From Macrostomum lignano (lineage: Eukaryota), in assembly GCA_002269645.1 (NCBI GenBank), contig NIVC01000146.1:186001-250000 (forward strand): DNA of 64,000 nucleotides, in the 5' to 3' direction. Below the pieces are notes generated by a model, which was not told the origin of the DNA, did no database searches, and saw only the letters and a list, made by a program, of their open reading frames with translations. A program made the translations under genes and the position numbers. This document shows, piece by piece, positions 90-40,258 of this stretch. Position 1 is the first letter of the stretch. Each line of letters opens with the position of its first letter.

Positions 90-712
90 TACTGACCAAC
101 CACCCGCACTGACCCACCACCCGCACTGACCCACCACCCGTACTGACCCACCACCCGCACTGACCCACTGCCCGCACTGACCCACCACCCGCACTGACCC
201 ACCACCCGCACTGACCCACCACCCGTACTGACCCACCACCCGCACTGACCCACTGCCCGCACTGACCCACCACCCGCACTGACCCACTGCCCGCACTGAC
301 CCACCACCCGCACTGACCCACTGCCCGCACTGACCCACCACCCGTACTGATCCACCACCCGCACTGACCCACCACCCGTACTGACCCACCACCCGCACTG
401 ACCCACCACCCGCACTGACCCACTGCCCGCACTGACCCACCACCCGCACTGACCCACTGCCCGCACTGACCCACCACCCGCACTGACCCACCACCCGCAC
501 TGACCCACTGCCCGCACTGACCCACTGCCCGCACTGACCCACCACCCGCACTGACCCACTGCCCGCACTGACCCACCACCCGCACTGACCCACCACCCGC
601 ACTGACCCGCCACCCGCACTGACCCACCACCCGCACTGACCCACCGCCTGCACTGACCCACCACCCGCACTGACCCACTGCCCGCACTGACCCACACCGC
701 CTGAGATGACCC
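90..712. repeat. 17-bp minisatellite (CTGACCCACCACCCGCA) filling a RECQL4 intron
   Basis: Direct reading. Confidence 0.97.
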
Positions 713-1365: not shown

Positions 1366-1465
1366 ATGTCCAAGCCGTCGCCAGCATCAGCAGCCTCAAT
1401 GCCAGCAGGAGGTGCCGCTACTGAACGCTCGGCTCTACCGCCGTTTCTACCTCGCAACGAGATCG
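1366..1465 (+). CDS. Nested caspase-like gene, putative exon 1
   Basis: ATG at 1366 (MSKPSPASAAS...). G|GTGAGT donor at 1466, then an AT-rich 96-nt segment ending TGCAG at 1561, with phase 1 on both sides. Confidence 0.6.
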
Positions 1466-1561
1466 GTGAGTCTGCGTCTTGTATTAAATATATTCGAATA
1501 ATACATATTAGCAATATATCAATATTATTAAGATATGAATATTGCAAACACATCGCTGCAG

Positions 1562-3492
1562 ATTTACCAGTGAGCGGTGAGGTTTGCAACCGGCTGGCTG
1601 ACAGTTTTGCCCAGCTGCCCGCTTGCGAGACAGTCGTGCCGCTGCCCACCTGCCCATCAGTGCCTGTCCTGCTGCTGACCCGCTCCTCAGACTCCGCCGC
1701 TGACGCCAGAGCCAAGTTTGATTCGCTGTCTAACAACCAGTGCACAATTCATTGCCAGGTGGCCGACTCGCTAGATAGTTACCATGGCAACGCTGTTAGA
1801 TTCTTGTCCATTGCTAAGTTGCGCGGCGATAGAGAGGCTTGGATTGTCCACGAGGTTAGCGTCACCGCGGACTGCCAGCAGGCGATGATCGGTGGCCAAA
1901 TCGTGATGGACAGCGAGCTTTACGAGCCTCTGTGTGGCCTGCGCGACTCCCAGCCCATCAGGCTGGCTCTGTTTCTCTTGATGACGTGCCAGACGAACTC
2001 TGCGGAGCCTTCTTGTAGCAGCAGCCGTCGTAGCAGAAGCAGCAACAGCAGCAGAAGCAACAGCATAGGCAACAGCAGAAGCAACAGCAGCAGAAGCAAC
2101 AGCATAGGCAACAGCAGAAGCAACAGCAGAGGCAAAAACAGCAGAAGCAACAGCAGCAGAAGCAACAGCATAGGCAACAGCAGAAGCAGCAGCAGAAGCA
2201 ACAGCATAGGCAACAGCAGAAGCAACAGCAGAAGCAGCAGCAGAAGCAACAGCAGCAGAAGCAACAGCATAGGCAACAGCTGAAGCAGCAGCAGAAGCAA
2301 CAGCAGCAGAAGCAACAGCACAGGCAACTGCAGAAGCAACAGCACAGGCAACTGCAGAAGCAACAGCATAGGCCACACCAGCAGAAGCAGATGCAGCACT
2401 GGCCAGTCTAGCAGCGGGCCAGCTCAGACTCCGAAACACGCCTCGCTATGCAACACCGAGATTCACAGTTTCAACTTTGGCAAAAATGGCGTCAACTGGC
2501 GGGAAGTGTTGCAGGCATTCGAGAGTCTGGAGGCCGGCAGCCGGACAGCAACGGTCGATAATTTGGTCAGCGAGGTTGTCAGGCACTGCACGGGGCTCAG
2601 CTCCCGTTGGATGTCGGGCGTGCCGAACGCCGATATCGTGTCAGCCAGTGTGCCAGACAATCCGCTGAGGCGGCTTCAGCTGCTGGGGACCAAGCTGTCC
2701 GCTGAGTGCAGCCAGCGGGGCTCGGCAGATCTCTTCCTGATTGTCGCTGTCGGCAAGTACAAATCAGGTATCAGGCTTGGCTTCGAGATGGACGTGGAAA
2801 ACTTCTCAAAAATTGCTCAGCATCTCGGCTGCTCAAGCGGGAACGTGCGCTCGCTGTGTCCGGCTGACGGCTGCGTGACAGCCGCTGAAATCCGCCGCTT
2901 TATCGAAGATGTCGTCAAGGATTGTCGCAACAAGTGGACTTTGCCTTCCCGCGTATTTCTGGCCGTCTCCGCGCACGGCGGCCAGTCCGGGATTTGCGCA
3001 TCGGACGGCCAGAATGTCACCGTGGAGGAGCTCCTGCTGCCTCTGTCGAGCCTTGGCTCCTTCTTGCTGTACTTCGGCCAGTCGTGTCGCGGCCGCCGCT
3101 TCCATGCCGCTGAGGCGGGCGGGAATTACCGGCCGCCAGCCTTCGCCTGCAGTCTCGGATTCGTCAGCCCGGACACCTCTGGCTGCGTGCTGCCGCCGCA
3201 GCTTCCGCGATCGGCCGCCATCTTTGCCAGCATGGCTGGGTACAAAGCCTATAGGCACGCTGAGAGCGGCAGCTTCATGCCGAAGGCGCTGCTTGATGTT
3301 GTGAGCCGTCCTGGAGCTTTCAGTGTCAGGCAGCTGGCTGAGATGCTGCAGGCCAGGATTCACGAGCTCGTGGATTTCGGGAGGGTCACTTGCCGAAGCC
3401 CTCAAAGCTTAGAACTCTACAAGGTCTATATTCAGACTCAGTACAGTGCCAACGATGGCTATGAGAACTTTATCATCCAGACGGGCTGTTGA
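1562..3492 (+). CDS. Nested caspase-like gene, exon 2: degenerate caspase-like domain, Ser/Asn/Arg repeat, intact caspase domain; one in-frame TGA at 2281-2283
   Basis: Track ORFs 1300-2283 and 2506-3492 share a frame, and I translated 2284-2505 as open. The C-terminal domain has caspase motifs RLG...D, VSAHG (His 2974), FGQSCRG (Cys 3085) and a p10-like AIFASMAGYKAYRHAESGSFM. Whether it is one protein depends on the TGA. Confidence 0.8.
2015..2390 (+). repeat. Coding tandem repeat (AGC AAC AGC AGA / ATA GGC variants) giving an S/N/R-rich linker
   Basis: Direct reading. All unit variants are multiples of 3 nt. Confidence 0.9.
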
Positions 3493-3858
3493 CTCCAAAA
3501 TGTGATCAGTTTTGCAGTGAATATTACTGAGATGTCAGCATGCGCATCAGTGCTAAATTTATACAGAATTGTACACAGCTGTGTTCGTACCCTAAATTTG
3601 TTCTATTCAGCAGTTTTTGTACGAGCTAAATAATACACTGCCTTCCGGTAACGTACTTGCCGCTTGTCAGAACTCAGCTATCATGTGACTGCCTGGTTTG
3701 GGACAATGCCTTGCAACTAACTTTGGCTGTCGTACGCGGCACCTACAAATACTTGTTTACCCCCCCACCCCAGCGAAAATGCTGTCCTGCTTTTTGCTCG
3801 GATTTTAATTATTTTAAATGACTGTTGAGTCTGTTGTTTGGCTTGTCTTTCTGAATCT

Positions 3859-4252
3859 CTGTCTGTCTGTCTTGTTTGTCTGTCTGTCTGTCTGTCTGTC
3901 TATCTGACTGACTGACTGACTGACTGACTGACTGACTGACTGACTGACTGACTGACTGACTGACTGACTGACTGACTGACTGACTGACTGACTGACTGAC
4001 TGACTGACTGACTGACTGACTGACTGACTGACTGACTGACTGACTGACTGACTGACTGACTGACTGACTGACTGACTGACTGACTGTCTGACTGACTGAC
4101 TGACTGACTGACTGACTGACTGACTGACTGACTGACTGACTGACTGACTGACTGACTGACTGACTGACTGACTGACTGACTGACTGACTGACTGACTGAC
4201 TGACTGACTGACTGACTGACTGACTGACTGACTGACTGACTGACTGACTGAC

Positions 4253-4313
<61 letters not shown>

Positions 4314-4317
4314 TGTT

Positions 4318-4370
<53 letters not shown>

Positions 4371-4376
4371 GTCTGC
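3859..4376. repeat. Compound microsatellite (GTCT)n-(GACT)n-(GTCT)n
   Basis: Direct reading. Confidence 0.98.
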
Positions 4377-4580: not shown

Positions 4581-5599
4581 TCAGCGGCCAGTCCTGGCCA
4601 CCCGGCGGCCACCTGCGCGCCCTGGACATCGCCGAGACGGTGGCGGAGCTGGACTCCACCGAGGAGACCATCGAGACCCTCCTGTGCTACCTGCAGCTCC
4701 GCTTCCCCGGCCGCTGCCGCCTCCTCGGCCGAGCCAACTCCCGCTACAGCCTGTCCAGCTACTCCGGCCCGGCCGGCCTCGCCTGGGCCGCCAGCCGCTG
4801 CCTCTGCGTGGCTGCCGCCCTGGCCGACCGGGCCGCCGCCGCCGCCGCAGCTGGTGCCGCCGCTGAAGCTGACGACGGCGCCAATCCGACCATCGACTTG
4901 GCCGCCCTCTGCGACCGATTCGGCTGGGACCCCAGCGCCGTCGGTCGCGACCTCGCCGGCATCGAATGGAACGACAGCGGCAGGCGCTCCGGCGTCGTTG
5001 CCAAGCCGGAGCGCCCGGCCTGGATGCTGCTGGCTCGCTGCTGCCAGGGCCACGAGGTCGCCGACCGGCTGGCCAATCACGTGATCGCCCGCCTGCGCCG
5101 AGTGGAGCGCTGCGCCCTGTCCGACATGCGCCGCTTGCACCGCCTGCTGGCCCGGTCCGCCTCCGTCGCTGCCGACCATGGCAACAACGATAGCGTCCCT
5201 AGCAACCAAGAGCCGGGCGAATCCTCCGGCGACAGTCTGCACGACGCCGCCAGCCGCGCCATCGCCGCTGGCGTCTTCGCCTACTTCGCCAATAGTGTCG
5301 AAGGCGATGACCGGTTCGAGGGCGGCGCCGGCGAGGACGACGCCGAGGACGACGACGACGCTGTCGACGAGTCGACGCTGGCCTGCGTCCGGGCCGGCGT
5401 TCGCGCCTTCATCGGGCTGTACGGCGGCGAGCACCGGCTGACGGCGCGGAACATCGCCTGCGTGATGCACGGCATCGGGACGCCCAACTTCCCAGCCGTG
5501 GTCTGGGGCCGCGTGCGCCGCTTCTGGCGGCTCCATGAGGCCGTGCCCTGGCCGGCTGTGCGCCGCGCCGCGCTGGAGGAGCTGCTGGCCACTCTGTGA
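4581..5599 (+). CDS. RECQL4: RecQ4-like helicase, terminal exon (R4ZBD and C-terminal domain)
   Basis: CGCAG acceptor at 4580 in matching phase 1. GHLRALDIAETVAELDSTEETIETLLCYLQL and RNIACVMHGIGTPNFPAVVWGRVRRFW align by eye to the RECQL4-specific GHERAL...LDMPEEAIETLLCYLEL and [27 protein letters not shown]. Stop TGA at 5597-5599. Confidence 0.9.
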
Positions 5600-5689: not shown

Positions 5690-7020
5690 ACCCCTTTATC
5701 AGTCAATGTAGGGAGGGTCAGATGACCCCATTTATCAGTCAATTTAGGGAGGGTCATATGACCCCATTTATCAGTCAATGTAGGGAGGGTCAGATGACCC
5801 CATTTATCAGTCAATTTAGAGAGGATCATATGACCCCCTTCATCAGTCAATTTAGAGAGGATCATATGACCCCCTTTATCAGTCAACTTAGAGAGGGTCA
5901 TATGACCCCATTTATCAGTCAGTTTAGGGAGGGTCATATGACCCCCTTTATCAGTCATTTCAGGGGGTCATATGACCCCATTTATCAGTCAATTTAGGGA
6001 GGGTCATAAGACCCCATTTATCAGTCAACTTAGAGAGGGTCATATGACCCCATTTATCAGTCAATTTAGGGAGGATCATATGACCCCATTTATCAGTCAA
6101 CTTAGAGAGGGTCATATGACCCCCTTTATCAGTCAATTTAGGGAGGATCATATGACCCCCTTTATCAGTCAATTTAGGGAGGATCATATGACCCCCTTTA
6201 TCAGTCAATTTAGGGAGGGTCATATGACCCCATTTACGAGCGTATTAGTCAATTTAGGGAAGATCAGATGACCCCATTTATCAGTCAATTTAGGGAGGGT
6301 CATAAGACCCCATTTATCAGTCAATTTAGGGAGGGTCATGTGACTCCTTTATCAGTCAATTTAGGGAGGGTTATATGACCCCCTTTATCAGTCAATTTAG
6401 GGAGGGTCATGTGACTCCTTTATCAGTCAATTTAGGGAGGGTCATATGACCCCATTTATCAGTCAATTTAGGGAGGGTCATGTGACCCCTTTATCAGTCA
6501 ATTTAGGGAGGGTCATATGACCCCCTTTATCAGTCAATTTAGGGAGGGTCATGTGACCCCCTTTATCAGTCAATTTAGGGAGGGTCATGTGACCCCCTTT
6601 ATCAGTCAATTTAGGGAGGGTCATGTGACCCCCTTTATCAGTCAATTTAGGGAGGGTCATGTGACCCCCTTTATCAGTCAATTTAGGGAGGGTCATATGA
6701 CCCCCTTTATCAGTCAATTTAGGGAGGGTCATATGACCCCCTTTATCAGTCAATTTAGGGAGGGTCATGTGACCCCCTTTATCAGTCAATTTAGGGAGGG
6801 TCATGTGACCCCCTTTATCAGTCAATTTAGGGAGGGTCATGTGACCCCCTTTATCAGTCAATTTAGGGAGGGTCATGTGACCCCCTTTATCAGTCAATTT
6901 AGGGAGGGTCATGTGACCCCCTTTATCAGTCAATTTAGGGAGGGTCATATGACCCCCTTTATCAGTCAATTTAGGGAGGGTCATGTGACCCCCTTTATCA
7001 GTCATTTAGGGAGGGTCATA
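5690..7020. repeat. 36-bp minisatellite (ATGACCCCCTTTATCAGTCAATTTAGGGAGGGTCAT)
   Basis: Direct reading. 12-aa periodicity in the ORF track. Confidence 0.98.
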
Positions 7021-7519
7021 TCTCATAACATCCTATAATTAGCATGAATACCTTCATTGTTGCAATGCTGCGAATTATATGCTATGCATTTTTAATCATA
7101 ACAGTATCATGTGCTAAAATAAATTTTTCACTGTTTGCGCAATATATTTTGCACTTTTCGCTTAATTTACAATTATCTCTGAGTACTGCTTCAGTGCCCA
7201 AATTATAAATTTAATTTTGCGTGCAAATCTGTCTTCGATTATCGAGTAGCTCGTACGAGTGCGACCCTGCGAATGCAATCTTGTTGCACACATCACAAAT
7301 GTATGAAACCGCTGACTTAAGCCAGTAACATTGCTATTTGCCAAAGATCTCCGTTGCTACACTGTTCTCGACTGTCTAGGTTGCCCAATGACAACTGGAC
7401 AGACTGGTACATGTAGGCCCAATAACAACTGGACAGACTGGTACATGAGGCCTGTTGGTCAGCACGCAGAAGAGCTGACTGTGCCCTGCGTGCCGGATGA
7501 CACGGGCACTTAAAGGTTA

Positions 7520-7980
7520 TGGTGTCCAGGCTTTCGAGGTTGGGTGTCCGAGATTCAAGGTTTGGTGTCCGGGCTTTCGAGGTTGGGTGTCCGAGATTCA
7601 AGGTTTGGTGTCCGGGCTTTCGAGGTTGGCTGTCGTGGCCAGGATTTTGAGGTTGGGTGTCCGAGATTCAAGGTTTGGTGTCCGGGTTTTGGAGGTTGGG
7701 TGTCCGGGGATTCAAGGTTTAGTGGCCGGGATTTCGAGGTTTGATGTCCGGGGCTCGATGTTTCGAAGTTGGGTGTCCATCAGGATTCAAGTTTTTGTGT
7801 CCGAGGGTTTCTAAGACTGGTGTCCAGGGTTTGGGTTGTGGTTGGGTGTCCGTGGTTCAAGATTTTGTGTCCCGGATTTCGGAGTTGGGTGTCCAGGGTT
7901 CGGGCTGGGTGTCCGGGTTCGAGGTTTGGCGTCCGGATTTTTGAAGCTGCGTGTCCGAGGTTCGAATTGGGTGTCCGGCG
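7520..7980. repeat. Degenerate 43-bp repeat with ~21-bp subunits (GGGTGTCCGAGATTCAAGGTT)
   Basis: Direct reading. TGGGTGTCCG recurs at 7541 and 7584. Confidence 0.85.
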
Positions 7981-8757
7981 GTTTCTGCACACTTAACTAT
8001 GTTGCTTAAGTTTTCTGTGCATTTTTCTTTTTAAAATCTGTTAGGTAATCTTCATTATACACTGCATTATGTCACGACTTTAAAAGAAGAAATGTAGCTG
8101 TCGCGGCCGTTAATGGTGTTTGTATTCACATATTCCTAAGGATTAGCTGGCGGTGCGAATCAGATTGCTTAATTGCAAGTATTTATTTATGGCAGTCATT
8201 AATATCGCAGGTAATATAATTATAAGTAACAATAGAGATATAACTGTCGGGCCATTCATCGCCTGTGCAGATTCTGTGCGCCAATGTACAGAGCAGGTGG
8301 GTGCAAAATCGGGTGGAGTGCGCCTGTTTCTATGGCAGAACTGGTTTCAGTCTATATTTTGGGATGATTCGGTGCATGCAAGCGCCAATTTTGTACAATA
8401 TTAGAATGTTCGAAAAAGCAGAGAATTGCAACTTGAGAGCAGGCAAAAGTAATTTAAGTGGCTGGGTTCTTCATCTACTGATACATGGCATGCTGCAGAA
8501 ACTATACTGTTCGAATAATTGCATTGCATGCTACTGATAGCAGTAGCTCAGTGCTGCGAGCATCTTTAAATTTTAAATTTAAACGTTTTTTAAACTGTTT
8601 TCAAGCAACTCGGTTACTCAGCCAACTATAAAAGCTCCTGGATCACAAGGTTTGTTCAGGTAAAAAACAAACCGGAAACTGCTAACGAAAAATTCCGCGA
8701 GTTTTGGCGCGAATTCAAATTCACTCGTGGGCAACAGGTCAGCTGCTGGGATGAATA

Positions 8758-18690: not shown

Positions 18691-20257
18691 CGGAGCGACC
18701 TATTCTAGAGCATCTTATTCCTAACTCTTGTGTCCTAGACCTTTATACATTATATATTTTCTCCAAAAAAAGCAAACCAGATAAAGCAACGGGAAACCAG
18801 ATACCCAGTTATTTTCTATTATTCCAAAAACGCAAAAATCGAAAAGCTGCATGAAATTTTTTTACCAGTCCGAGAATCCCATCTCCTTAGCAACTAAAAA
18901 AACCTTACAGACTGACCATCTGACAGGCAAAAGAGCAGCTTATCTAATCGGAATGTGAAAACTTGACTCCTGTTAATTGCAGGCAGGCAAATCCTGTATC
19001 TGAGCAAAAGACTAATTAATTAAGTATAGGAAAATTAGCCTGACAGACCATGGGTCCAGTTTCCAACCATCATTATGAAGGCAGCATGGGACTGCCCGGA
19101 CAGAAACTTAGTGAATCTGTTAACGCTGCTATAGTGAGGCTATTTAACTGGATAATAGTGCCTCGGATACTAACAGGCATAACATGGGTGTGTGCCCTGA
19201 GGCGAAATAAAACCTCAAAAATGCATGTTATATAAGGCTACAGGATTTAAGCATTATGGCAGCTTGCTAAATTAGTAATCTAAGTATATGGATTAGTATG
19301 CTTTCAGATGCAGGCTGCAAGAGGTCTGGAAGTGTGAAGTGCTCATTTCCTGAGCACAGCAGAGGCCGAGGACCCGGGGCTCCATCGAACTTCAATCGAG
19401 ACTTGAGAGTGGCCTCTGGCTGCATCCATGGGCAGTTGAATTCCAGAGCTTCCAGCTTGCAATTATGTTTTTATTTGCGAGTAATTTCTTCTCTGGACCG
19501 GTTAAATGGGGGTTTAGTTTTTACAATCGAGACCAACCGTCAACCCAATGAACCTTGGCTTTAAACTTGGCTTCAGCCATTATCCAAATTAAACAGACCC
19601 AACAAGATTAGTAGCACTACTTGCGCAACACACTACTACTCCACTGTCAGTAGTAGTATAGATTGAGCATGAAGTTTCGAATTTAAAATGAATCTGAACT
19701 GCAGAGTTGGTCTCCCTCGCCAGCTCGCCTTGGAAATTCAACTCGTTTCGAACTATACTGCGGTAGAACAAGCAATGGATCATAATTTCCACAAAATTTG
19801 AATAGTTAGATAAATCAATCCGAAATAAATTTGTGTACAAATTTGACTTTAATACTCGCTAAAATCTGGAACTGGTCTCAACTCTCGAATCAAATAAATT
19901 ACCGAGCTTGAGTCTGGTGTCAAATTCGCGGGAAAATATCTAAAGGCTGAAGGATAACCTCGCACTACTTTACTAATAGTACAGTGCCGGCTGGCCTGAT
20001 CTTCCAGAGGTACCGTGCATGCATTTCAACTCCAAAGGCCGCGAATTGCCTGAAAAAAGCAGGCAAGCAGAAAGGGGAAAAAGGGAGAAGAAGACTGTGG
20101 CGCGGGCCCCCGGGGTCGGGAGTCAGTCCTGGTGTCCTGGCACACTGCCCCCCCCCCATCCCTGGCTTCGGTCCGCCCCTCCCACAGCGGGGCAGTCGCA
20201 GCCCCGGCAGCGGTACAAAAGAAGCAGAAAAGAAGAAGTTTCCATGTGGCTACTTAC

Positions 20258-20375
20258 CTGTGAGAAGCGAATGAGGCCGTCAGAGCGGTTGAGGGCGCCG
20301 GGCGCAAGTCAGGCAGACGGGCAAGGCAAGTGGCGCGGAAGCGGGATGGGGTTGGGCCGCTGCGGCCTGCGACTG
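20258..20375 (-). other. Pax6: Putative Pax6 5' UTR exon, left copy (5' end approximate)
   Basis: Consensus donor CAG|GTAAGT at 20257, in the Pax6 orientation, at the end of a GC-rich promoter-like block. No usable ORF. Confidence 0.45.
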
Positions 20376-20620
20376 TTTTATTCGCATGAGGAGGAAGGGA
20401 GAGCGGAGCGCGGCAGAGGAGGGGGCGGCCCGCCTCGCCTCAGCGAATCGAAAGAAGGTGGCGCGCCCGAAATTGATGATTGAGCACGGATGGGCCCGCG
20501 CAATGAGGCGCGGTTAATGCAAAGCCCAGTGGACTGAACTGCCGCCACACAGGCTTCTGCGTCTGAGTACGAGTCCCCCCGCTACCATTGGCTGCGACAA
20601 GCCTGCCGGGCCAGCCAATC
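20376..20620 (-). promoter_or_regulatory. Putative Pax6 promoter, left copy
   Basis: Two oppositely oriented CCAAT boxes (20587-20591, 20615-20619), GC-rich sequence and an AATAAAA TATA-like motif at 20376-20382 upstream of the putative UTR exon. Confidence 0.4.
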
Positions 20621-20769
20621 AGCGGCCAGGGACATCTTCTGTCTGCCTGCCGGCAACCCAGCGTTTTGCGAATCTTTTGAGTCTCGCCGGCTTGAGAATT
20701 CAACTGGCAATATTTTATATTTGTGTTGAGTGCCAGTCTGCAGCTATGTGTTTGCTTGCCATAGCATTT

Positions 20770-21555
20770 CCCATCTCTAAACTACACCCATTCTATTCTC
20801 TAAACTGCACTATTCTATCTCTAAACTGCACTATTCTATCTCTAAACTACACCCATTCTATCTCTAAACTGCACTATTCTATCTCTAAACTGCTCCGACT
20901 CTATCTCTAAACTGCACCCCATTCTATCTCTAAACTGCACCCCATTCTATCTCTAAACTGCACTATTCTATCTCTAAACTGCACTATTCTATCTCTAAAC
21001 TGCACCCCATTCTATCTCTAAACTGCACTATTCTATCTCTAAACTGCTCCGACTCTATCTCTAAACTGCACCCCATTCTATCTCTAAACTGCACTATTCT
21101 ATCTCTAAACTGCTCCGACTCTATCTCTAAACTGCACCCCATTCTATCTCTAAACTGCACTATTCTATCTCTAAACTGCACTATTCTATCTCTAAACTGC
21201 ACCCCATTCTATCTCTAAACTGCACTATTCTATCTCTAAACTGCACTATTCTATCTCTAAACTGCACTATTCTATCTCTAAACTGCACCCCATTCTATCT
21301 CTAAACTGCATCCAATTCTGTCTCTAAACTGAATCCTCCTCTCCGGTCTCTCCCCCTTTCTCCCTCTCTCTGCCTCCCTCTCTCTGTCTCCCTCTCTCTG
21401 TCTCCCTCTCTCTGTCTCCCTCTCTCTGTCTCCCTCTCTCTGTCTCCCTCTCTCTGCCTCCCTCTCTCTGTCTCCCTCTCTCTGTCTCCCTCTCTCTGTC
21501 TCCCTCTCTCTGTCTCCCTCTCTCTGTCTCCCTCTTTCTGCCTCCCTCTCGCAGT
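20770..21555. repeat. 21-bp minisatellite (TATTCTATCTCTAAACTGCAC) followed by a 14-bp CT-rich repeat; mirror at 56905-57645
   Basis: Direct reading. Confidence 0.96.
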
Positions 21556-22659
21556 CTCTCTTACATCCTCTCAGACCCCAGCTCCGTAATTTCAAAAATA
21601 TGCTTATATACTGAATCTGAATCTGAAAACTCGATTCATCCCATCAACTATGCCATACCATATAGGCCAAAAATATAAATAACACAATAAATATAGTAGC
21701 TGCATCATTTCATACAGCCGTTCCGCTCTTTACACAGAACTGCATGGCTTATCGACAAATTTTATTGCGCTTATCGGAGAGACAGAGAGAGAGGAGAGAG
21801 AGAGTGAAATCTCACCGCACCGGGTAGGGGGGAGGTTATCAGTTGCCAGGGATCTCTGAGATTTGAGATTAATGCCCCGGTGTGCAGCGGTGGGCGGAGG
21901 AGGTCAATAAGTCGCTCCCCCGCTCCCCATCCCGCGCCAACCCCCCCCCCCCCCCCAATTTGATTTCACACACGGCTGGCGAAGCGGCAGGCTATTTCTG
22001 CATTATTCAGAGCAGCCAAAGTATTTTATAGAGAAAGGGAAAAAGCAAGCCTGCATTTTGAAACGGACACAGAAATTTTATTCGCGCAGAATCGAGTATA
22101 GGAGAGAGTAATGGAATGACAGCGCGACCCCCCCCCCCCTACTCAAAATGAAGTCACCCGATCATAATCGAGGCACAATGTCTTGACAAGCTTATAAAAC
22201 TGTTTTGATTGTAGATTTTTATACATTTTAGCGCCGGGAGTTTCTCCCTGGATGAGCCCGAGACATCAGCAGTTTTATGCCCTCGAGGGCGCATGACTGC
22301 GGGAGCTGCTCAAGGCTTCTGGCTTGAGTTAAACTCCCGCTCAGCAGGTCCCTATAAACAAAAATAGCGAGCATTTCAGTCAACTGCTGCCTTGAGGGGG
22401 GAGTAGGAATTGAGTTTCAATGGCCAGTTTTTCACCGCAATATTAAATATCAACAACTGTAATTGAATTTTAACTCAATGATCATCTGTGTGCGTTCGTT
22501 TATGGGGCATGTTTTGTTGGCAATAAAAACACCCGTCTGCCTCCGTCCAGCCACTCTATCGCTAAAAGTTGCGCAATTGATAACATGACTTGACTTTTTG
22601 CTGTAGCTTTTGCATATGCATTCCATAACTCGTGGCTCTGGTGAATACGAGACCCTTTG

Positions 22660-23640
22660 TATCCTGACCCATTCTATCCTTGACCCATTCTATCCTGACC
22701 CATTCTATCCTTGACCCATTCTATCCTGACCCATTCTATCCTGACCCATTCTATCCTGACCCATTCTATCCTGACCCATTGTATCCTGACCCATTGTATC
22801 CTGACCCAGTCTATCCTGACCCAGTCTATCCTGACCCATTCTATCCTGACCCATTCTATCCTGACCCATTCTATCCTGACCCATTGTATCCTGACCCATT
22901 CTATCCTGACCCATTCTATCCTGACCCATTCTATCCTGACCCATTCTATCCTGACCCATTGTATCCTGACCCATTGTATCCTGACCCATTGTATCCTGAC
23001 CCATTCTATCCTGACCCATTCTATCCTGACCCATTCTATCCTGACCCATTCTATCCTGACCCATTCTATCCTGACCCATTCTATCCTGACCCATTCTATC
23101 CTGACCCATTCTATCCTGACCCATTCTATCCTGACCCATTCTATCCTGACCCATTCTATCCTGACCCATTCTATCCTGACCCATTCTATCCTGACCCATT
23201 CTATCCTGACCCATTCTATCCTGACCCATTCTATCCTGACCCATTCTATCCTGACCCATTCTATCCTGACCCATTCTATCCTGACCCATTCTATCCTGAC
23301 CCATTCTATCCTGACCCATTCTATCCTGACCCATTCTATCCTGACCCATTCTATCCTGACCCATTCTATCCTGACCCATTCTATCCTGACCCATTCTATC
23401 CTGACCCATTCTATCCTGACCCATTCTATCCTGACCCATTCTATCCTGACCCATTCTATCCTGACCCATTCTATCCTGATCCACTAAATCCTGACCCACT
23501 AAATCCTGACCTGCTAAATCCTGACCCACTAAATCCTGACCCACTAAATCCTGACCTGCTAAATGCTGACCCACTAAATCCTGACCCACTAAATCCTGAC
23601 CTGCTAAATCCTGACCCACTATATCCCGACCTACTTAAAT
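22660..23640. repeat. 15-bp minisatellite (CTGACCCATTCTATC); mirror at 54900-55820
   Basis: Direct reading. Confidence 0.98.
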
Positions 23641-33774: not shown

Positions 33775-36605
33775 GGCGCCCCTGACAATGGTGTCCTTAA
33801 GGTGGTGCCCCTGACGATGGTGTCCCCAAGATGGCGCCCCTGACGATGGTGTCCCCAAGGTGGCGCCCCTGACAATGGTGTCCCCAAATTGGCGGCGCCC
33901 CTGACAATGGTGTCCCCAAATTGGCGGCGCCCCTGACAATGGTGTCCCCAAATTGGCGGCGCCCCTGACAATGGTGTCCCCAAATTGGCGGCGCCCCTGA
34001 CAATGGTGTCCCCAAATTGGCGGCGCCCCTGACAATGGTGTCCCCAAATTGGCGGCGCCCCTGACAATGGTGTCCCCAAATTGGCGGCGCCCCTGACAAT
34101 GGTGTCCCCAAGATGGCGCCCCTGACAATGGTGTCCCCAAATTGGCGGCGCCCCTGACAATGGTGTCCCCAAATTGGCGGCGCCCCTGACAATGGTGTCC
34201 CCAAGATGGCGCCCCTGACAATGGTGTCCCCAAGATGGCGCCCCTGACGATGGTGTCCCCAAGGTGGCGCCCCTGACAATGGTGTCCCCAAATTGGCGGC
34301 GCCCCTGACAATGGTGTCCCCAAATTGGCGGCGCCCCTGACAATGGTGTCCCCAAATTAGCGGCGCCCCTGACAATGGTATCTACAATGGTGTCCCCAAA
34401 TTAACGGCGTCCCTGGCAATGGTGTCCTTAAGGTGGTGCCCCTGACGATGGTGTCCCCAAGATGGCGCCCCTGACGATGGTGTCCCCAGGGTGGCGCCCC
34501 TGACAATGGTGTCCCCAAATTGGCGGCGCCCCTGACAATGGTGTCCCCAAATTGGCGGCGCCCCTGACAATGGTGTCCCCAAATTGGCGGCGCCCCTGAC
34601 AATGGTGTCCCCAAATTGGCGGCGCCCCTGACAATGGTGTCCCCAAGATGGCGCCCCTGACAATGGTGTCCCCAAATTGGCGGCGCCCCTGACAATGGTG
34701 TCCCCAAATTGGCGGCGCCCCTGACAATGGTGTCCCCAAGATGGCGCCCCTGACAATGGTGTCCCCAAGATGGCGCCCCTGAAGATGGTGTCCCCAAGAT
34801 GGCGCCTCTGACAATGGTGTCCCCAAGATGGCGCCTCTGACAATGGTGTCCCCAAGATGGCGCCTCTGACAATGGTGTCCCCGAGGTGGCGCCCCTGACA
34901 ATGGTGTCCCCGAGGTGGCGCCCCTGAAGATGGTGTCCCCGAGGTGGCACCCCTGAAGATGGTGTCCCCAAGATGGCGCCCCTGACGATGGGGTCCCCAA
35001 GGTGGCGCCCCTGAAGATGGTGTCCCCAAGATGGCGCCTCTGACAATGGTGTCCCCAAGATGGCGCCCCTGACAATGGTGTCCCCAAGGTGGCGCCCCTG
35101 AAGATGGTGTCCCCAAGGTGGCGCCCCTGAAGATGGTGTCCCCAAGATGGCGCCCCTGAAGATGGTGTCCCCAAGGTGGCGCCCCTGAAGATGGTGTCCC
35201 CAAGATGGCGCCCCTGAAGATGGTGTCCCCAAGGTGGCGCCCCTGAGGATGGTGTCCCCAAGGTGGCGCCCCTGAAGATGGTGTCCCCAAGGTGGCGCCC
35301 CTGAAGATGGTGTCCCTAAGATGGCGCCCCTGACAATGGTGTCCCCGAGGTGGCACCCCTGAAGATGGTGTCCCCAAGATGGCCGCCCTGACGATGATGT
35401 CCCCAAGATGGCGCCCCTGAAGATGGTGTCCCCAAGGTGGCGCCCCTGACGATGGGGTCCCCAAGGTGGCGCCCCTGAAGATGGTGTCCCCAAGATGGCG
35501 CCTCTGACAATGGTGTCCCCAAGATGGCGCCTCTGACAATGGTGTCCCCAAAATGGCGCCTCTGACAATGGTGTCCCCGAGGTGGCGCCCCTGACAATGG
35601 TGTCCCCGAGGTGGCGCCCCTGAAGATGGTGTCCCCGAGGTGGCACCCCTGAAGATGGTGTCCCCAAGATGGTGCCCCTGACAATGGTGTCCCCAAGGTG
35701 GCGCCCCTGAAGATGGTGTCTTCAAGGTGGCGCCCCTGAAGATGGTGTCTTCAAGGTGGCGCCCCTGAAGATGGTGTCCCCAAGGTGGCGCCCCTGAAGA
35801 TGGTGTCCCCAAGATGGCGCCCCTGAAGATGGTGTCCCAAGGTGGCGCCCCTGAAGATGGTGTCCCCAAGATGGCGCCCCTGACAATGGTGTCCCCAAGA
35901 TGGCGCCCCTGAAGATGGTGTCCCCAAGATGGCGCCCCTGAAGATGGTGTCCCCAAGGTGGCGCCCCTGAGATGGTGTCCCCAAGGTGGCGCCCCTGAAG
36001 ATGGTGTCCCCAAGTGGCGCCCCTGAAGATGGTGTCCCTAAGATGGCGCCCCTGACAATGGTGTCCCCGAGGTGGCACCCCTGAAGATGGTGTCCCCAAG
36101 GTGGCGCCCCTGAAGATGGTGTCCCCAAGATGGCGCCCCTGAAGATGGTGTCCCCAAGGTGGCGCCCCTGAAGATGGTGTCCCCAAGATGGCGCCCCTGA
36201 AGATGGTGTCCCCAAGGTGGCGCCCCTGAAGATGGTGTCCCCAAGTGGCGCCCCTGAAGATGGTGTCCCTAAGATGGCGCCCCTGACAATGGTGTCCCCA
36301 AGGTGGCGCCCCTGACAATGGTGTCCCCAAGATGGCCGCCCTGACGATGGTGTCCCCAAGATGGCGGCCCTGACGATGGTGTCCCCAAGGTGGCGCCCCT
36401 GAAGATGGTGTCCCCAAAGTGGCGCCCCTGAAGATGGTGTCCCTAAGATGGCGCCCCTGACAATGGTGTCCCCAAGGTGGCGCCCCTGACAATGGTGTCC
36501 CCAAGATGGCCGCCCTGACGATGGTGTCCCCAAGATGGCGGCCCTGACGATGGTGTCCCCAAGGTGGCACCCCTGACGATGGTGTCCCCAAGGTAGCGCC
36601 CCCTG
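33775..36605. repeat. 29-32-bp minisatellite (GGCGCCCCTGACAATGGTGTCCCCAAGAT); mirror at 43310-45962
   Basis: Direct reading. Largest array in the window. Confidence 0.98.
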
Positions 36606-37569
36606 ACAGATAAGCAAGTCTGCCAAAAATAGAGTAATTAATAAAACACGGAAAAAATTGACAAGCTCCGACAACTGCGGGACAGACAAACCAATCCCCC
36701 AACGGCCTTCGGCGAGGCGAGATACGCGACTCTAGCGACCGTCTCCAGCCCAGCTGTCGGACCATTGCTAGCCGCGAGTGCCCTTTGAATGCCAGGACAG
36801 CCCGGCCGCCGCCTGTCAGTGTGACAAATGCGATATTTTATTGACTGACTGAGATCCCTGGCGCCGTCTTGACAGAATTGAAGAACTGCCAAGGCTGAGG
36901 CGTGGGGGGAGGTGTTGGCTGTGAAAAAAATCGGCCCACCAGTCCTCGAAGACCGCATAAATGAGGACGCATTCGACCAGAAAATTCGCGGGCCCATTGA
37001 CATTGAAGCCAATAGCTATGGTGTATATAAATATAATGCGAGGGGCTGCTCAATCTCAGACAGTTATGCAAATGCGACCAGCTGCCGCGCAACTCAGCAT
37101 CGTCACCTTTCCCCTACTGCAGACTCCTCCTCCTCCCACCCATCATCTTATAGGCGCCCGATGCGAAAGGAAAAGTTGGCGACGCGTAAAGCCGGCCGGC
37201 CCGGCCCGGCCTGTCAGGGAGGTTTTCTACTCGGCCAACTCCGGAGCGCCCGCCTACTTCCCGGCTCCTCCTTCCACTTCTCAGCCATCCGCCCTGCATC
37301 CGAACTTCCCGGTGCCAAGAAGGTCTGGCTGGCTGTGACGGCGCAAACGCAATCCGGAGCCGCATGGCAGCCAGGGGGGGGGGGAACAAAGACTCCGGGA
37401 CAGCACTCGAAATTCGGATCGCTGACTCCGCCGCCTCGTCAGCTTTCACTTTTCTGAGTTGCGCGGCTTTGTCTGCCAGAGTTTCCACAGGGCCGCCGAG
37501 TTCTGTTCTACAGTGCTCTGGCTCGGCCTCTTAAAGTTGCAAGTGCTGCTAGCTGCTCTTAGCTACTAG

Positions 37570-39010
37570 TGGTATCTGTCTCATTGCCTGGTCTCTGATC
37601 TTGTCCGGTATCTGTCTGGTCTTGTCCGGTATCTGTCTAGCCTTGTCTCTGGTATCTGTCTGGTCTTGTCTCTGGTATCTGTCTCATTGTCTGGTCTCTG
37701 ATCTTGTCTGGTATCTGTCTGATCTTGTCCGGTATCTGTCTGGTCTTGTCTCTGGTATCTGTCTCATTGTCTGGTCTCTGATCTTGTCCGGTATCTGTCT
37801 GGTCTTGTCTCTGGTATCTGTCTCATTGTCTGGTCTCTGATCTTGTCCGGTATCTGTCTGGTCTTGTCTCTGGTATCTGTCTCATTGTCTGGTCTCTGAT
37901 CTTGTCCGGTATCTGTCTGGTCTTGTCCGGTATCTGTCTGGTCTTGTCTCTGGTATCTGTCTGGTCTTGTCTCTGGTATCTGTCTCATTGTCTGGTCTCT
38001 GATCTTGTCTGGTATCTGTCTGGTCTTGTCCGGTATCTGTCTAGCCTTGTCTCTGGTATCTGTCTGGTCTTGTCCGGTATCTGTCTGGTCTTGTCTCTGG
38101 TATCTGTCTGGTCTTGTCTCTGGTATCTGTCTCATTGTCTGGTCTCTGATCTTGTCCGGTATCTGTCTGGTCTTGTCTCTGGTATCTGTCTCATTGTCTG
38201 GTCTCTGATCTTGTCCGGTATCTGTCTGGTCTTGTCCGGTATCTGTCTGGTCTTGTCTCTGGTATCTGTCTGGTCTTGTCTCTGGTATCTGTCTCATTGT
38301 CTGGTCTCTGATCTTGTCTGGTATCTGTCTGGTCTTGTCCGGTATCTGTCTAGCCTTGTCTCTGGTATCTGTCTGGTCTTGTCCGGTATCTGTCTGGTCT
38401 TGTCTCTGGTATCTGTCTGGTCTTGTCTCTGGTATCTGTCTCATTGTCTGGTCTCTGATCTTGTCCGGTATCTGTCTGGTCTTGTCTCTGGTATCTGTCT
38501 CATTGTCTGGTCTCTGATCTTGTCCGGTATCTGTCTGGTCTTGTCCGGTATCTGTCTGGTCTTGTCTCTGGTATCTGTCTGGTCTTGTCTCTGGTATCTG
38601 TCTCATTGTCTGGTCTCTGATCTTGTCCGGTATCTGTCTGGTCTTGTCTCTGGTATCTGTCTGGTCTTGTCTCCGGTATCTGTCTGGTCTTGTCCGGAAT
38701 CTGTCTGGTCTTGTCTCTGGTATCTGTCTGGTCTTGTCTCTGGTATCTGTCTGGTCTTGTCTCTGCATCAGTCAGGTCTGATCTGGTCTCAGTCAGGTCA
38801 GATCTGGTCTCAGTCAGGTCAGATCTGGTCTCAGTCAGGTCAGATCTGGTCTCAGTCAGGTCAGATCTGGTCTCAATCAGGTCAAAAAAATAAAAGTCTG
38901 GTCTCTTGATCTTGTCTGGTATCTGTCTGGTCTTGTCCGGTATCTGTCTAGCCTTGTCTCTGGTATCTGTATGGTCTTGTCCGGTATCTGTCTGGTCTTG
39001 TCCGGTATCT
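37570..39010. repeat. ~23-bp higher-order array (GGTATCTGTCTGGTCTTGTCTCT) with an embedded 21-bp block (CAGTCAGGTCAGATCTGGTCT); mirror at 40570-42345
   Basis: Direct reading. Confidence 0.96.
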
Positions 39011-39808
39011 NNNNNNNNNNNNNNNNNNNNNNNNNNNNNNNNNNNNNNNNNNNNNNNNNNNNNNNNNNNNNNNNNNNNNNNNNNNNNNNNNNNNNNNNNN
39101 NNNNNNNNNNNNNNNNNNNNNNNNNNNNNNNNNNNNNNNNNNNNNNNNNNNNNNNNNNNNNNNNNNNNNNNNNNNNNNNNNNNNNNNNNNNNNNNNNNNN
39201 NNNNNNNNNNNNNNNNNNNNNNNNNNNNNNNNNNNNNNNNNNNNNNNNNNNNNNNNNNNNNNNNNNNNNNNNNNNNNNNNNNNNNNNNNNNNNNNNNNNN
39301 NNNNNNNNNNNNNNNNNNNNNNNNNNNNNNNNNNNNNNNNNNNNNNNNNNNNNNNNNNNNNNNNNNNNNNNNNNNNNNNNNNNNNNNNNNNNNNNNNNNN
39401 NNNNNNNNNNNNNNNNNNNNNNNNNNNNNNNNNNNNNNNNNNNNNNNNNNNNNNNNNNNNNNNNNNNNNNNNNNNNNNNNNNNNNNNNNNNNNNNNNNNN
39501 NNNNNNNNNNNNNNNNNNNNNNNNNNNNNNNNNNNNNNNNNNNNNNNNNNNNNNNNNNNNNNNNNNNNNNNNNNNNNNNNNNNNNNNNNNNNNNNNNNNN
39601 NNNNNNNNNNNNNNNNNNNNNNNNNNNNNNNNNNNNNNNNNNNNNNNNNNNNNNNNNNNNNNNNNNNNNNNNNNNNNNNNNNNNNNNNNNNNNNNNNNNN
39701 NNNNNNNNNNNNNNNNNNNNNNNNNNNNNNNNNNNNNNNNNNNNNNNNNNNNNNNNNNNNNNNNNNNNNNNNNNNNNNNNNNNNNNNNNNNNNNNNNNNN
39801 NNNNNNNG
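39011..39808. other. Assembly gap (798 N) at the symmetry centre
   Basis: Run of N. Confidence 1.
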
Positions 39809-40190
39809 GGAAGAAGAGAGGAGAGGAGAGAGGGAAGAAGAGAGAGAGAGGAGAGAGGGAAGAAGAGAGAGGAGAGAGAGAGGAAGAAGAGAGAGGAGAG
39901 GAGAGAGGGAAGAAGAGAGAGGAGAGGAGAGAGGGAAGAAGAGAGAGGAGAGGAGAGAGGGAAGAAGAGAGAGGAGAGGAGAGAGGGAAGAAGAGAGAGG
40001 AGAGGAGAGAGGGAAGAAGAGAGAGGAGAGGAGAGGAGAAGAGGGAAGAAGAGAAGGAGAGAAGAGAGAGGAGAGGGGAGAAGGGAGAGGAGAGAGGGAA
40101 GGAGAGAGAGGAGAGGAGAGAGAGAGGGAAGGAGAGGAGAGGAGAGGAGAGAAGGGAGAGGAGAGCATATTAGAGAGAAGGGAGAAGAGA
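39809..40190. repeat. Polypurine GA-rich tract (AGAGG/GAAGA)
   Basis: Almost exclusively A and G for about 350 bp. Only one copy is visible. Confidence 0.95.
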
Positions 40191-40199
40191 TACAAGCCT

Positions 40200-40258
40200 T
40201 GAGCGGCCGGATTGGTATATCGTGAAAGGACCCCGAGGGCCGGAGTTGCCGACCCCTT
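40200..40258 (-). mobile_element. hAT (Charlie/MER58-like) transposon terminus fragment
   Basis: Reverse complement reads AGGGGTCGGCAACTCCGGCCCTCGGGG...AATCCGGCCGC, resembling the CAGGGGTCGGCAAACT.CGGCCC.CGGG termini of Charlie-type hAT elements (from memory, not a database hit). The partner end is not visible. Confidence 0.45.

What the first reader, a model, noticed from the sequence alone, without database searches (positions are those of the whole stretch)
1366..3492. Single-chain tandem pseudo-caspase plus caspase
Seen: the C-terminal domain has the His/Cys dyad (SAHG, QSCRG) and residues matching the Asp-specific S1 pocket (RLG Arg, Gln of QSCRG, YKAYR Arg), with a candidate processing site VSPD|T. 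Inference from alignment by eye: the N-terminal half follows the same fold. VLLLTRSSDSAADARAKFDSL resembles the first strand and helix, WIVHEVSVT lies where FVCVLLSHG sits (His lost), and LALFLLMTCQT matches KLFIIQACRG (Cys kept at 1987). After the S/N/R repeat, GVNWREVLQAFESL...VDNLVSEVVRH resembles the p10 helices. Established: caspases activate as dimers, and the dead homologue cFLIP activates caspase-8 by heterodimerising with it. A covalent dead-plus-live pair would be a pre-formed heterodimer. I do not know a described example, but I cannot search.
Basis: partly seen in the sequence, partly recalled or inferred. Interest (0 to 1): 0.75.

Follow-up and report, generated by a model that had tools for sequence, protein, structure and literature searches.

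The report
Flatworm double caspase, reading frame interrupted

Summary
The C-terminal half (2728-3489) is a real animal-type caspase domain. It matches Pfam Peptidase_C14 at E 2.5e-11 and has His 2974, Cys 3085 and the Asp-pocket residues Arg/Gln/Arg.

The only relatives found are three Macrostomum lignano proteins, about 45% identical. They carry both halves in one chain, and the two intact genes encode them in one exon, so the fusion is real for the family.

The N-half has no significant sequence match to any caspase (Pfam, PDB, profile-profile comparison, my shuffle test). A template-free AlphaFold model of it (pTM 0.62) has the caspase order of strands and helices. Its seven best PDB matches are all caspases, but with weak scores (E 0.04-0.12). 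I call the pseudo-caspase reading probable, not shown.

An in-frame TGA at 2281-2283 lies inside a 356-bp Ser/Asn/Arg repeat that the relatives lack. This copy may be a pseudogene, a sequence error, or unusually spliced.

VSPD|T is not conserved, and domain packing could not be judged.

The architecture is already described in Acropora caspase-X (2016, tested in cells), mammalian caspase-16 (2025) and bivalves. This is a new, very diverged flatworm member of a known kind.

The parts
1366..1465 (+). Proposed exon 1 (MSKPSP...PRNEI, plus the first base of the next codon). The start codon is not certain; an upstream in-frame ATG lies at 1300.
   Evidence: The N-terminus aligns loosely with P0001.
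1466..1561 (+). Proposed 96-nt intron: GTGAGT...CAG, 72% A+T, keeps the frame.
   Evidence: Its position falls within one residue of the P0001 exon 2/3 junction.
1660..1995 (+). N-domain, large-subunit-like part: four strands and three helices in caspase order. Val/Thr stands where the catalytic His would be. A Cys (1987-1989), invariant in all four N-domains, stands at the end of strand 4.
   Evidence: Secondary structure from AlphaFold. Foldseek best hits are caspases. Conserved 38-40% with the M. lignano proteins. No Pfam hit.
2034..2389 (+). Tandem repeat (12/51-nt units, AGC AGA AGC AAC...) encoding a Ser/Asn/Arg tract. It is an insertion relative to all relatives and sits in the loop equivalent to a caspase intersubunit linker.
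2281..2283 (+). In-frame TGA stop inside the repeat. It is one base away from the AGA that other repeat units carry at this position.
2443..2652 (+). N-domain, small-subunit-like part: strand (TEIHSFNF), then the G-x-NW motif with an invariant Trp, two helices (REVLQAFESL; TVDNLVSEVVRH) and a last strand.
   Evidence: Invariant columns.
2653..2727 (+). Linker between the domains. It is variable in length and sequence among relatives (about 25 residues here, up to about 70 in P0002).
2728..3489 (+). C-terminal catalytic caspase domain (Peptidase_C14). His 2974-2976 (SAHG) and Cys 3085-3087 (QSCRG). S1 pocket: Arg 2773-2775, Gln 3079-3081, Arg 3253-3255.
   Evidence: Pfam E 2.5e-11, above the curated cutoff. 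PDB profile hits to caspases-2, -3, -1 and CED-3, with the Arg/Cys/Arg positions aligned. Foldseek of the full model hits CED-3, caspase-1 and caspase-2. All these residues are invariant in the three full-length relatives.
3490..3492 (+). Terminal TGA stop.

Best explanation
The locus is one copy of a small gene family so far seen only in Macrostomum flatworms. I call its members double caspases.

The C-terminal domain is a complete, Asp-directed animal caspase. The N-terminal roughly 330 codons, excluding the repeat, most likely fold as a second, catalytically dead caspase-like domain. In that domain the His is replaced by Val/Thr, the S1 residues are gone and the Cys is kept. It has diverged beyond recognition by sequence.

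By analogy with Acropora caspase-X, mammalian caspase-16 and the cFLIP(L):caspase-8 pair, the dead domain is inferred to pack against the live one within the same chain. That would give a built-in pseudo-dimer with one active site, in which the dead domain sets the activity of the live one, either restraining or enabling it. The C-domain linker has no conserved Asp, which fits control by domain pairing rather than by linker cleavage.

In this window a Ser/Asn/Arg microsatellite has expanded inside the surface loop of the dead domain that corresponds to the intersubunit linker. One repeat unit now reads TGA. As sequenced, this copy cannot make the fused protein.

Shown here: the C-domain identity, the fusion in relatives, the repeat and the stop. 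Inferred: the N-domain fold (moderate support), the intramolecular pairing, and its regulatory direction.
For: C-domain:
- Pfam C14 at E 2.5e-11.
- Caspase-2/3/1/CED-3 profile hits with the S1 Arg, the catalytic Cys and the second Arg aligned.
- Dyad and S1 residues are invariant in the family.

Fusion:
- The only homologues, P0001 (615 aa) and P0002 (542 aa), cover both halves.
- P0002 is a single exon. P0001 has both halves contiguous at L002 10884-12440.

N-domain fold:
- The AlphaFold model from N-domains only (no caspase sequence in the alignment) has pTM 0.62 and core pLDDT 70-84.
- Its seven best matches among 350,542 PDB chains are all caspases: procaspase-7, CED-3, Sf-caspase-1, caspase-8, caspase-7 and caspase-1, with prob 0.57-0.87. 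Caspases make up most of the top 50, and the related protease legumain also appears.
- The order of strands and helices is the same as in the C-domain.
- The variable-length insert lies exactly between strand 4 and strand 5.
- The only hhalign match, although weak, is in the expected register: GGQIVMDSELYEPL...C against DGQNVTVEELLLPL...C.
- The N-domain is 38-40% conserved among proteins whose N-half DNA gave no nucleotide-level match, which suggests constraint.

Mechanism by precedent:
- In caspase-X, removing the N-terminal dead domain raised cytotoxicity, and its model pairs the two domains through strand 6 (PMC4715348).
- The same proposal is made for caspase-16 (PMC12198278).
Against: No sequence method links the N-half to caspases:
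- Pfam gives nothing at E<=10 for four N-domains.
- The PDB profile search gives nothing.
- The exhaustive search of 1.84 billion representatives finds only the M. lignano family.
- hhalign of N against C gives probability 2-5%.
- In the column-shuffle test 13 of 300 shuffles reached the observed score, and the reversed N-domain scored as high.

The structural support is weak:
- No Foldseek match reaches E<=0.001. TM-scores are 0.38-0.40 and rmsd values are large.
- The alignment has only four sequences, and three of the five AlphaFold models fell below pLDDT 45.
- Domain-domain packing is unresolved: full-length pTM is 0.37.

For this copy, the TGA at 2281 prevents a fused product unless it is an error or is spliced out.
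Confidence: 0.55

Rival explanations
1. The N-half is a lineage-specific alpha/beta prodomain that is not derived from a caspase. On this reading the caspase-like Foldseek hits come from a generic three-layer sandwich produced by a low-confidence model. The protein would be an ordinary caspase with an unusual long prodomain, as the lophotrochozoan survey reports for some other caspases.
For: - No significant sequence similarity to caspases by any method.
- Foldseek E-values are 0.04 or worse, and APOBEC-type deaminases also appear in the list.
- The AlphaFold alignment is shallow.
- Unusual prodomains are known in flatworm and annelid caspases (PMC11463336).
Against: - The seven best PDB matches, and most of the top 50, are caspases, with alignments of 170-220 columns spanning both sub-parts. 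The deaminase hits cover only about 110-120 columns at prob <=0.28.
- The order of strands and helices, including the hairpin after strand 3 and the two helices before the last strand, matches the adjacent true caspase domain.
- The insert and variable loop fall at the linker position.
Confidence: 0.3
2. This particular copy is a pseudogene or a truncated gene. The TGA is real, and at most a product ending in the repeat is made, that is the dead half-domain only. The caspase domain downstream would then be untranslated or decaying.
For: - The TGA is in frame, and no convincing intron removes it.
- The family does decay. The M. lignano locus L003 (P0003), a duplicate of the P0001 locus with the same homeobox neighbour, has lost about 51 residues including the SAHG region and changes frame. 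Its N-domain dN/dS against P0001 is 0.76.
- The repeat expansion is absent from relatives.
Against: - Apart from this one codon, the 676 codons carry no other stop or frameshift. Every catalytic and S1 residue is intact, so any inactivation would be very recent.
- A single base in a long microsatellite is also a plausible assembly or polishing error.
- The rest of the window shows signs of difficult assembly: a palindrome more than 40 kb long made of minisatellite arrays.
Confidence: 0.4
3. The repeat, or most of it, is an intron. The mature mRNA would then join the two halves without the stop, giving a protein with a short linker like the relatives.
For: - Twelve frame-keeping GT...AG pairs span the stop, for example 2015-2422.
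- The relatives have only 20-30 residues at this place.
Against: - All three candidate donors are weak (CTT|GTAGCA, GCC|GTCGTA, GTC|GTAGCA).
- There is no pyrimidine tract before any acceptor.
- A+T is 46-48%, against 72% for the canonical intron 1466-1561.
- The relatives have no intron at this position; both halves lie in one exon.
Confidence: 0.1

Closest known systems
Acropora caspase-X (AmCaspase Xa-Xd; Moya et al. 2016, PMC4715348)
   Same: One chain with a first, inactive caspase-like domain and a second, fully typical caspase domain. A multi-copy, lineage-expanded family. The proposed pairing of the two domains resembles cFLIP/procaspase-8.
   Different: - In caspase-X the first domain is recognisable by sequence as a caspase (CASc) domain and lacks both His and Cys. 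Here it is invisible to Pfam and keeps the Cys.
- Caspase-X has functional data: in HeLa cells, removing the dead domain raised killing. Nothing has been tested for the flatworm protein.
- Common descent versus independent duplication was not tested.
Mammalian caspase-16 (Eckhart et al. 2025, PMC12198278)
   Same: An N-terminal prodomain predicted to adopt a caspase fold without the dyad, followed by a C-terminal catalytic domain. The same intramolecular-dimer idea is proposed. Pseudogene copies are frequent (human, mouse).
   Different: - In caspase-16 the duplication is traceable exon by exon and by BLAST. Here both domains lie in one exon with no significant internal similarity.
- The two belong to different phyla and probably different caspase subfamilies.
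cFLIP(L) : procaspase-8 heterodimer
   Same: A dead caspase-like domain pairs with a live one and gives a single active site. This is the functional model invoked here.
   Different: - cFLIP and caspase-8 are two separate polypeptides brought together by tandem death effector domains on an adaptor.
- No DED, CARD or other recruitment domain was found in this protein.
- The pairing here would be covalent.
Bivalve caspases with two CASc domains (Mytilus coruscus, PMC10967218)
   Same: Lophotrochozoan caspases with a duplicated caspase domain in one predicted protein.
   Different: They are reported only as domain counts from gene models. Both domains are detectable by sequence. The passage I read does not say whether either domain is active or inactive.

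Membership tests
Caspase (peptidase family C14A), C-terminal domain | Significant match to the Peptidase_C14 profile | tested here: met
   PF00656 at E 2.5e-11, 44.2 bits against a cutoff of 21.4, covering profile positions 5-211 of 233.
Caspase (peptidase family C14A), C-terminal domain | His-Cys dyad in the SHG and QACxG contexts | tested here: met
   SAHG (His 2974) and QSCRG (Cys 3085) align to the SHG and QACRG of caspase-2/3-type chains. Both are invariant in the family.
Caspase (peptidase family C14A), C-terminal domain | Asp-specific S1 pocket (Arg179, Gln283, Arg341 in caspase-1 numbering) | tested here: met
   The Arg of IRLG aligns with the Arg of TRNG. The Gln precedes the Cys. The Arg of AYR aligns with the Arg of AMRN. 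All are invariant. The mapping to caspase-1 numbering is from my own knowledge.
Caspase (peptidase family C14A), C-terminal domain | Asp processing site in the intersubunit linker | tested here: not met
   The Asp of VSPD|T is not conserved (relatives have VSPPK and ENPK). P0001 has no Asp in this linker. This feature is not universal among caspases.
Caspase (peptidase family C14A), C-terminal domain | Cleavage after Asp by the protein | not testable with these tools
   Needs recombinant protein and peptide substrates.
Double caspase (dead plus live caspase domain in one chain: caspase-X / caspase-16 type) | Both halves encoded by one gene and one chain | tested here: inconclusive
   Met in the relatives, where both halves lie in one exon. 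In this window the frame is broken by TGA 2281-2283.
Double caspase (dead plus live caspase domain in one chain: caspase-X / caspase-16 type) | The N-terminal domain has the caspase fold | tested here: inconclusive
   The AlphaFold model has pTM 0.62. Its best PDB hits are all caspases, but at E 0.04-0.12 and TM about 0.4. The order of strands and helices matches.
Double caspase (dead plus live caspase domain in one chain: caspase-X / caspase-16 type) | The N-terminal domain is recognisable as a caspase domain by sequence | tested here: not met
   Tested; no test was significant.
Double caspase (dead plus live caspase domain in one chain: caspase-X / caspase-16 type) | The N-terminal domain lacks catalytic residues | tested here: met
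   In the structure-guided register, Val134 (Val/Thr in relatives) stands at the His position and the S1 Arg/Gln/Arg are absent. The Cys (1987) is retained and invariant.
Double caspase (dead plus live caspase domain in one chain: caspase-X / caspase-16 type) | The two domains pair through their last strands within the chain | tested here: inconclusive
   The full-length model has pLDDT 46.8 and pTM 0.37, and no coordinates or error map were available.
Double caspase (dead plus live caspase domain in one chain: caspase-X / caspase-16 type) | Common descent with caspase-X or caspase-16 | not tested
cFLIP / DED-caspase type | Tandem death effector domains at the N-terminus | tested here: not met
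   No DED or CARD hit was found in the parts scanned (240 aa and 402 aa, E<=10). The short exon-1 peptide was not scanned.

The most novel reading that the evidence does not exclude
Macrostomum flatworms independently evolved a single-exon, single-chain pseudo-dimeric caspase. Its dead partner domain has diverged past sequence recognition but keeps the active-site Cys. Its live domain needs no Asp cleavage of its linker (P0001 has no Asp there), so activity would be set purely by intramolecular pairing. That would be a third, convergent origin of the built-in cFLIP solution. It would be experimentally tractable, because the gene has no introns between the domains and M. lignano supports RNAi and transgenesis.
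Probability: 0.3. Interest if true: 0.55.

Novelty: new member of a known kind. Interest (0 to 1): 0.35.

Why it matters
Caspases need a partner domain to become active. A chain that carries its own dead partner is a natural experiment in how that pairing controls activity.

The design is already known from corals, where it has been tested, and from mammals, where it has been predicted. A flatworm version would show that it recurs across animals.

It would also show that pseudo-caspase domains can hide below the detection limit of sequence profiles. The 2024 lophotrochozoan caspase survey reported only one unusual prodomain in flatworms, a kinase-like one in M. lignano (PMC11463336), so domain surveys may undercount such proteins.

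For this window specifically, the practical message is that the gene model needs the stop at 2281 resolved before any claim about a fused product.

Tried and rejected
- **Profile search with the C-half alignment A2** against the 5.8-billion-protein set returned nothing, not even the known relatives. It was uninformative, probably because the candidate list saturated.
- **Search with the neighbouring RecQ4-like ORF**, meant to identify the source species, also returned nothing. The species stays unknown. 'Macrostomum-like' rests only on the best hits.
- **Exhaustive representative search with the N-half profile** found only the M. lignano family plus two spurious repeat proteins, P0004 and P0005. 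No deeper alignment could be built for AlphaFold.
- **hhalign of N against C** was tried in local and global modes. It was also tried with AlphaFold secondary structure added at higher weight. The latter gives a colinear alignment of 184-204 columns at 18-20% identity, but with E 0.77-1. I used it only to map equivalent residues, not as evidence.
- **Column-shuffle test of N-against-C similarity**: 13 of 300 shuffles reached the observed score, and the reversed control scored equally. I rejected it as evidence for duplication.
- **dN/dS of the N-domain**, P0001 against the L003 copy, is 0.76. This is uninformative about constraint because L003 is itself decayed. The script stopped on a zero-dS segment and I did not pursue it.
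- **Synteny between the window and the M. lignano loci**: none. Nucleotide identity is about 66%, and only in the C-half.
- **Second copy in the window**: none.
- **Rfam scan of the window**: nothing.
- **Pfam on ten other long ORFs**: nothing. Most of them run through minisatellite arrays.
- **Literature search for the M. lignano gene identifiers**: no paper.

Full report
**What is in the sequence**

- The ORF list shows two ORFs in the same frame, 1300-2283 and 2506-3492, separated by a stop.
- The stop is TGA at 2281-2283. It lies inside a 12/51-nt tandem array at 2034-2389 that encodes the Ser/Asn/Arg tract.
- The repeat unit at that position elsewhere reads AGA AGC AAC AGC, so the stop is one base away from an Arg codon.
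The model therefore includes a sensible 96-nt intron (GTGAGT...CAG, 72% A+T) but reads straight through the stop.
- Twelve frame-keeping GT...AG pairs could remove the stop. All have poor donors, no pyrimidine tract and 46-48% A+T.

**The C-terminal half is a caspase**

- Translations of 2284-3489, 2506-3489 and 2716-3489 each hit Pfam Peptidase_C14 at E of about 1e-11 to 1e-10, well above the curated cutoff.
- A profile of this half and its two relatives hits animal caspases in the PDB: a caspase-2 variant, an ancestral caspase-3/6/7, Sf-caspase-1, caspase-3 and CED-3, with E from 8e-5.
- In those alignments the Arg of IRLG, the QSCRG Cys and the Arg of AYR fall on the caspase S1 Arg, the catalytic Cys and the second S1 Arg.
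- All of these, and SAHG, are invariant in the three proteins.
- The Asp of VSPD|T is not conserved. P0001 has no Asp in that linker at all.

**Relatives and gene structure**

- A search of 5.8 billion proteins with 2401-3489 found only two proteins, both from Macrostomum lignano: P0001 (615 aa) and P0002 (542 aa), 45% identical.
- Both also contain the N-half at 38-40% identity (VLLL..., IVHEI.VT.NCQQP...LLCPTEC), with a 20-30-residue linker where the window has its repeat.
- P0002 is a single uninterrupted exon nested antisense in an inositol-trisphosphate-receptor gene. In P0001 both halves are contiguous in one exon.
- P0001's upstream intron lies within one residue of the window's proposed intron.
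- So the two halves are one gene in this family.
- A third M. lignano locus (P0003, L003) has the same homeobox neighbour as the P0001 locus. It has lost about 51 residues including the SAHG segment and changes frame, so copies of this family do decay.
- A more distant single-domain caspase paralogue lies 4 kb downstream of P0001.
- The window shares no synteny with these loci and only about 66% nucleotide identity. It is either another species or an unannotated diverged paralogue.

**Is the N-half a caspase fold?**

By sequence, the answer is no.
- Pfam gives nothing at E<=10 for the window or the three relatives' N-domains.
- A PDB profile search gives nothing.
- An exhaustive HMMER search of 1.84 billion representatives finds only the M. 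lignano family.
- hhalign of N against C gives probability 2-5%.
- In my column-shuffle test 13 of 300 shuffles reached the observed score, and the reversed control scored equally.

By predicted structure, the answer is probably yes.
- The full-length model (repeat removed, four-sequence alignment) is poor, with pLDDT 46.8 and pTM 0.37.
- It nevertheless gives the N-half the same order of elements as the true caspase half: strand-helix-strand-helix-strand-hairpin-helix-strand, then a linker, then strand-helix-helix-strand.
- A model of the N-domain alone, from an alignment that contains no caspase sequence, reaches pTM 0.62 with a core pLDDT of 70-84. Only two of the five models were that good.
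- Searched against 350,542 PDB chains, its seven best matches are all caspases: procaspase-7, CED-3, Sf-caspase-1, caspase-8, caspase-7 and caspase-1, with prob 0.57-0.87 and E 0.04-0.12.
- Caspases fill most of the top 50, and the clan relative legumain also appears. The only other recurring fold, APOBEC deaminases, gives shorter and less probable matches.
- No match reaches E<=0.001, and TM is about 0.4, normalised over a query of which a third is disordered.
- In the structure-guided register the His position holds Val/Thr and the S1 residues are absent.
- In the same register an invariant Cys (1987) sits at the catalytic-Cys position. An invariant Trp in G-x-NW sits where caspases have GSW.
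- The repeat and the variable linker fall exactly where a caspase has its intersubunit linker.

I put the caspase-like fold at roughly 0.65-0.7.

**Mechanism**

- Packing of the two domains could not be judged from the models.
- The proposed mechanism is a dead domain pairing within the chain with the live one and so setting its activity. This is an inference from precedent.
- The lack of a conserved Asp in the C-domain linker fits control by pairing rather than by cleavage.

**Comparison with what is known**

- Acropora millepora caspase-X proteins have an inactive first and an active second caspase domain. In HeLa cells, removing the first domain increased killing. A model pairs the domains through strand 6, as in cFLIP/procaspase-8 (PMC4715348).
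- Mammalian caspase-16 has a dead caspase-like prodomain derived by exon duplication, and the same cFLIP analogy is drawn for it (PMC12198278).
- Four Mytilus coruscus caspases have two CASc domains (PMC10967218).
- A 2024 survey of lophotrochozoan caspases reports for M. lignano only a kinase-like prodomain, and no other unusual prodomain in flatworms (PMC11463336).
- The flatworm case therefore appears undescribed, plausibly because the dead domain is invisible to domain scans.

**Verdict**

The live caspase and the fusion in relatives are shown. The pseudo-caspase fold is probable. The processing site, the packing and the novelty claim are not supported.
- This is a new, highly diverged member of a known kind. 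This particular copy may be broken.

Noticed in passing
window 4640-5599 (+): A 319-codon ORF is homologous to the C-terminal region of the RecQ4 helicase (PDB 5lst residues 489-652, E 1.4e-10). No helicase-core exon lies between it and the window start. The caspase gene may therefore sit inside, or directly upstream of the last exon of, a RecQ4 gene on the same strand. The relative P0002 is also a nested gene, inside an ITPR gene.
   Followed up: partly
window about 15800-63000, centre near 39900: A giant inverted repeat (palindrome) whose arms are built of many different minisatellite arrays in mirrored order, for example 33958-39010 against 45960-40923 and 19159-23596 against 59287-54892. 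The arms are 93-98% identical. It could be a real palindrome or a fold-back artefact of long-read assembly. If it is an artefact, base-level accuracy of the contig, including the TGA at 2281, deserves doubt.
   Followed up: partly
window 91-695, 3858-4375, 5691-7021, 7513-7985: Dense tandem arrays flank the gene: a 17-nt unit x36, TCTG x129, a 36-nt unit x37 and a 22/43-nt unit. Many long 'ORFs' in the window are just these arrays read in frame, and none of the ten ORFs tested had a Pfam hit.
   Followed up: partly
window 38001-40000: G+C drops to 0.295 with strong T excess (AT skew -0.42), then strong A excess in 40001-42000. This lies at the centre of the palindrome.
   Followed up: no
L003 6001-8360 (M. 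lignano NIVC01000482): This duplicate of the P0001 locus has the same upstream homeobox gene. It lacks about 51 residues including the catalytic-His segment and changes frame at about 7803-7807. The annotated 374-aa product P0003 is the truncated remnant.
   Followed up: partly
L002 16459-17328 (M. lignano NIVC01003266): A more distant caspase paralogue (SSHG, YHACRG; 28% identical to the window C-half) lies 4 kb downstream of P0001. No N-half-like sequence was detected there.
   Followed up: partly
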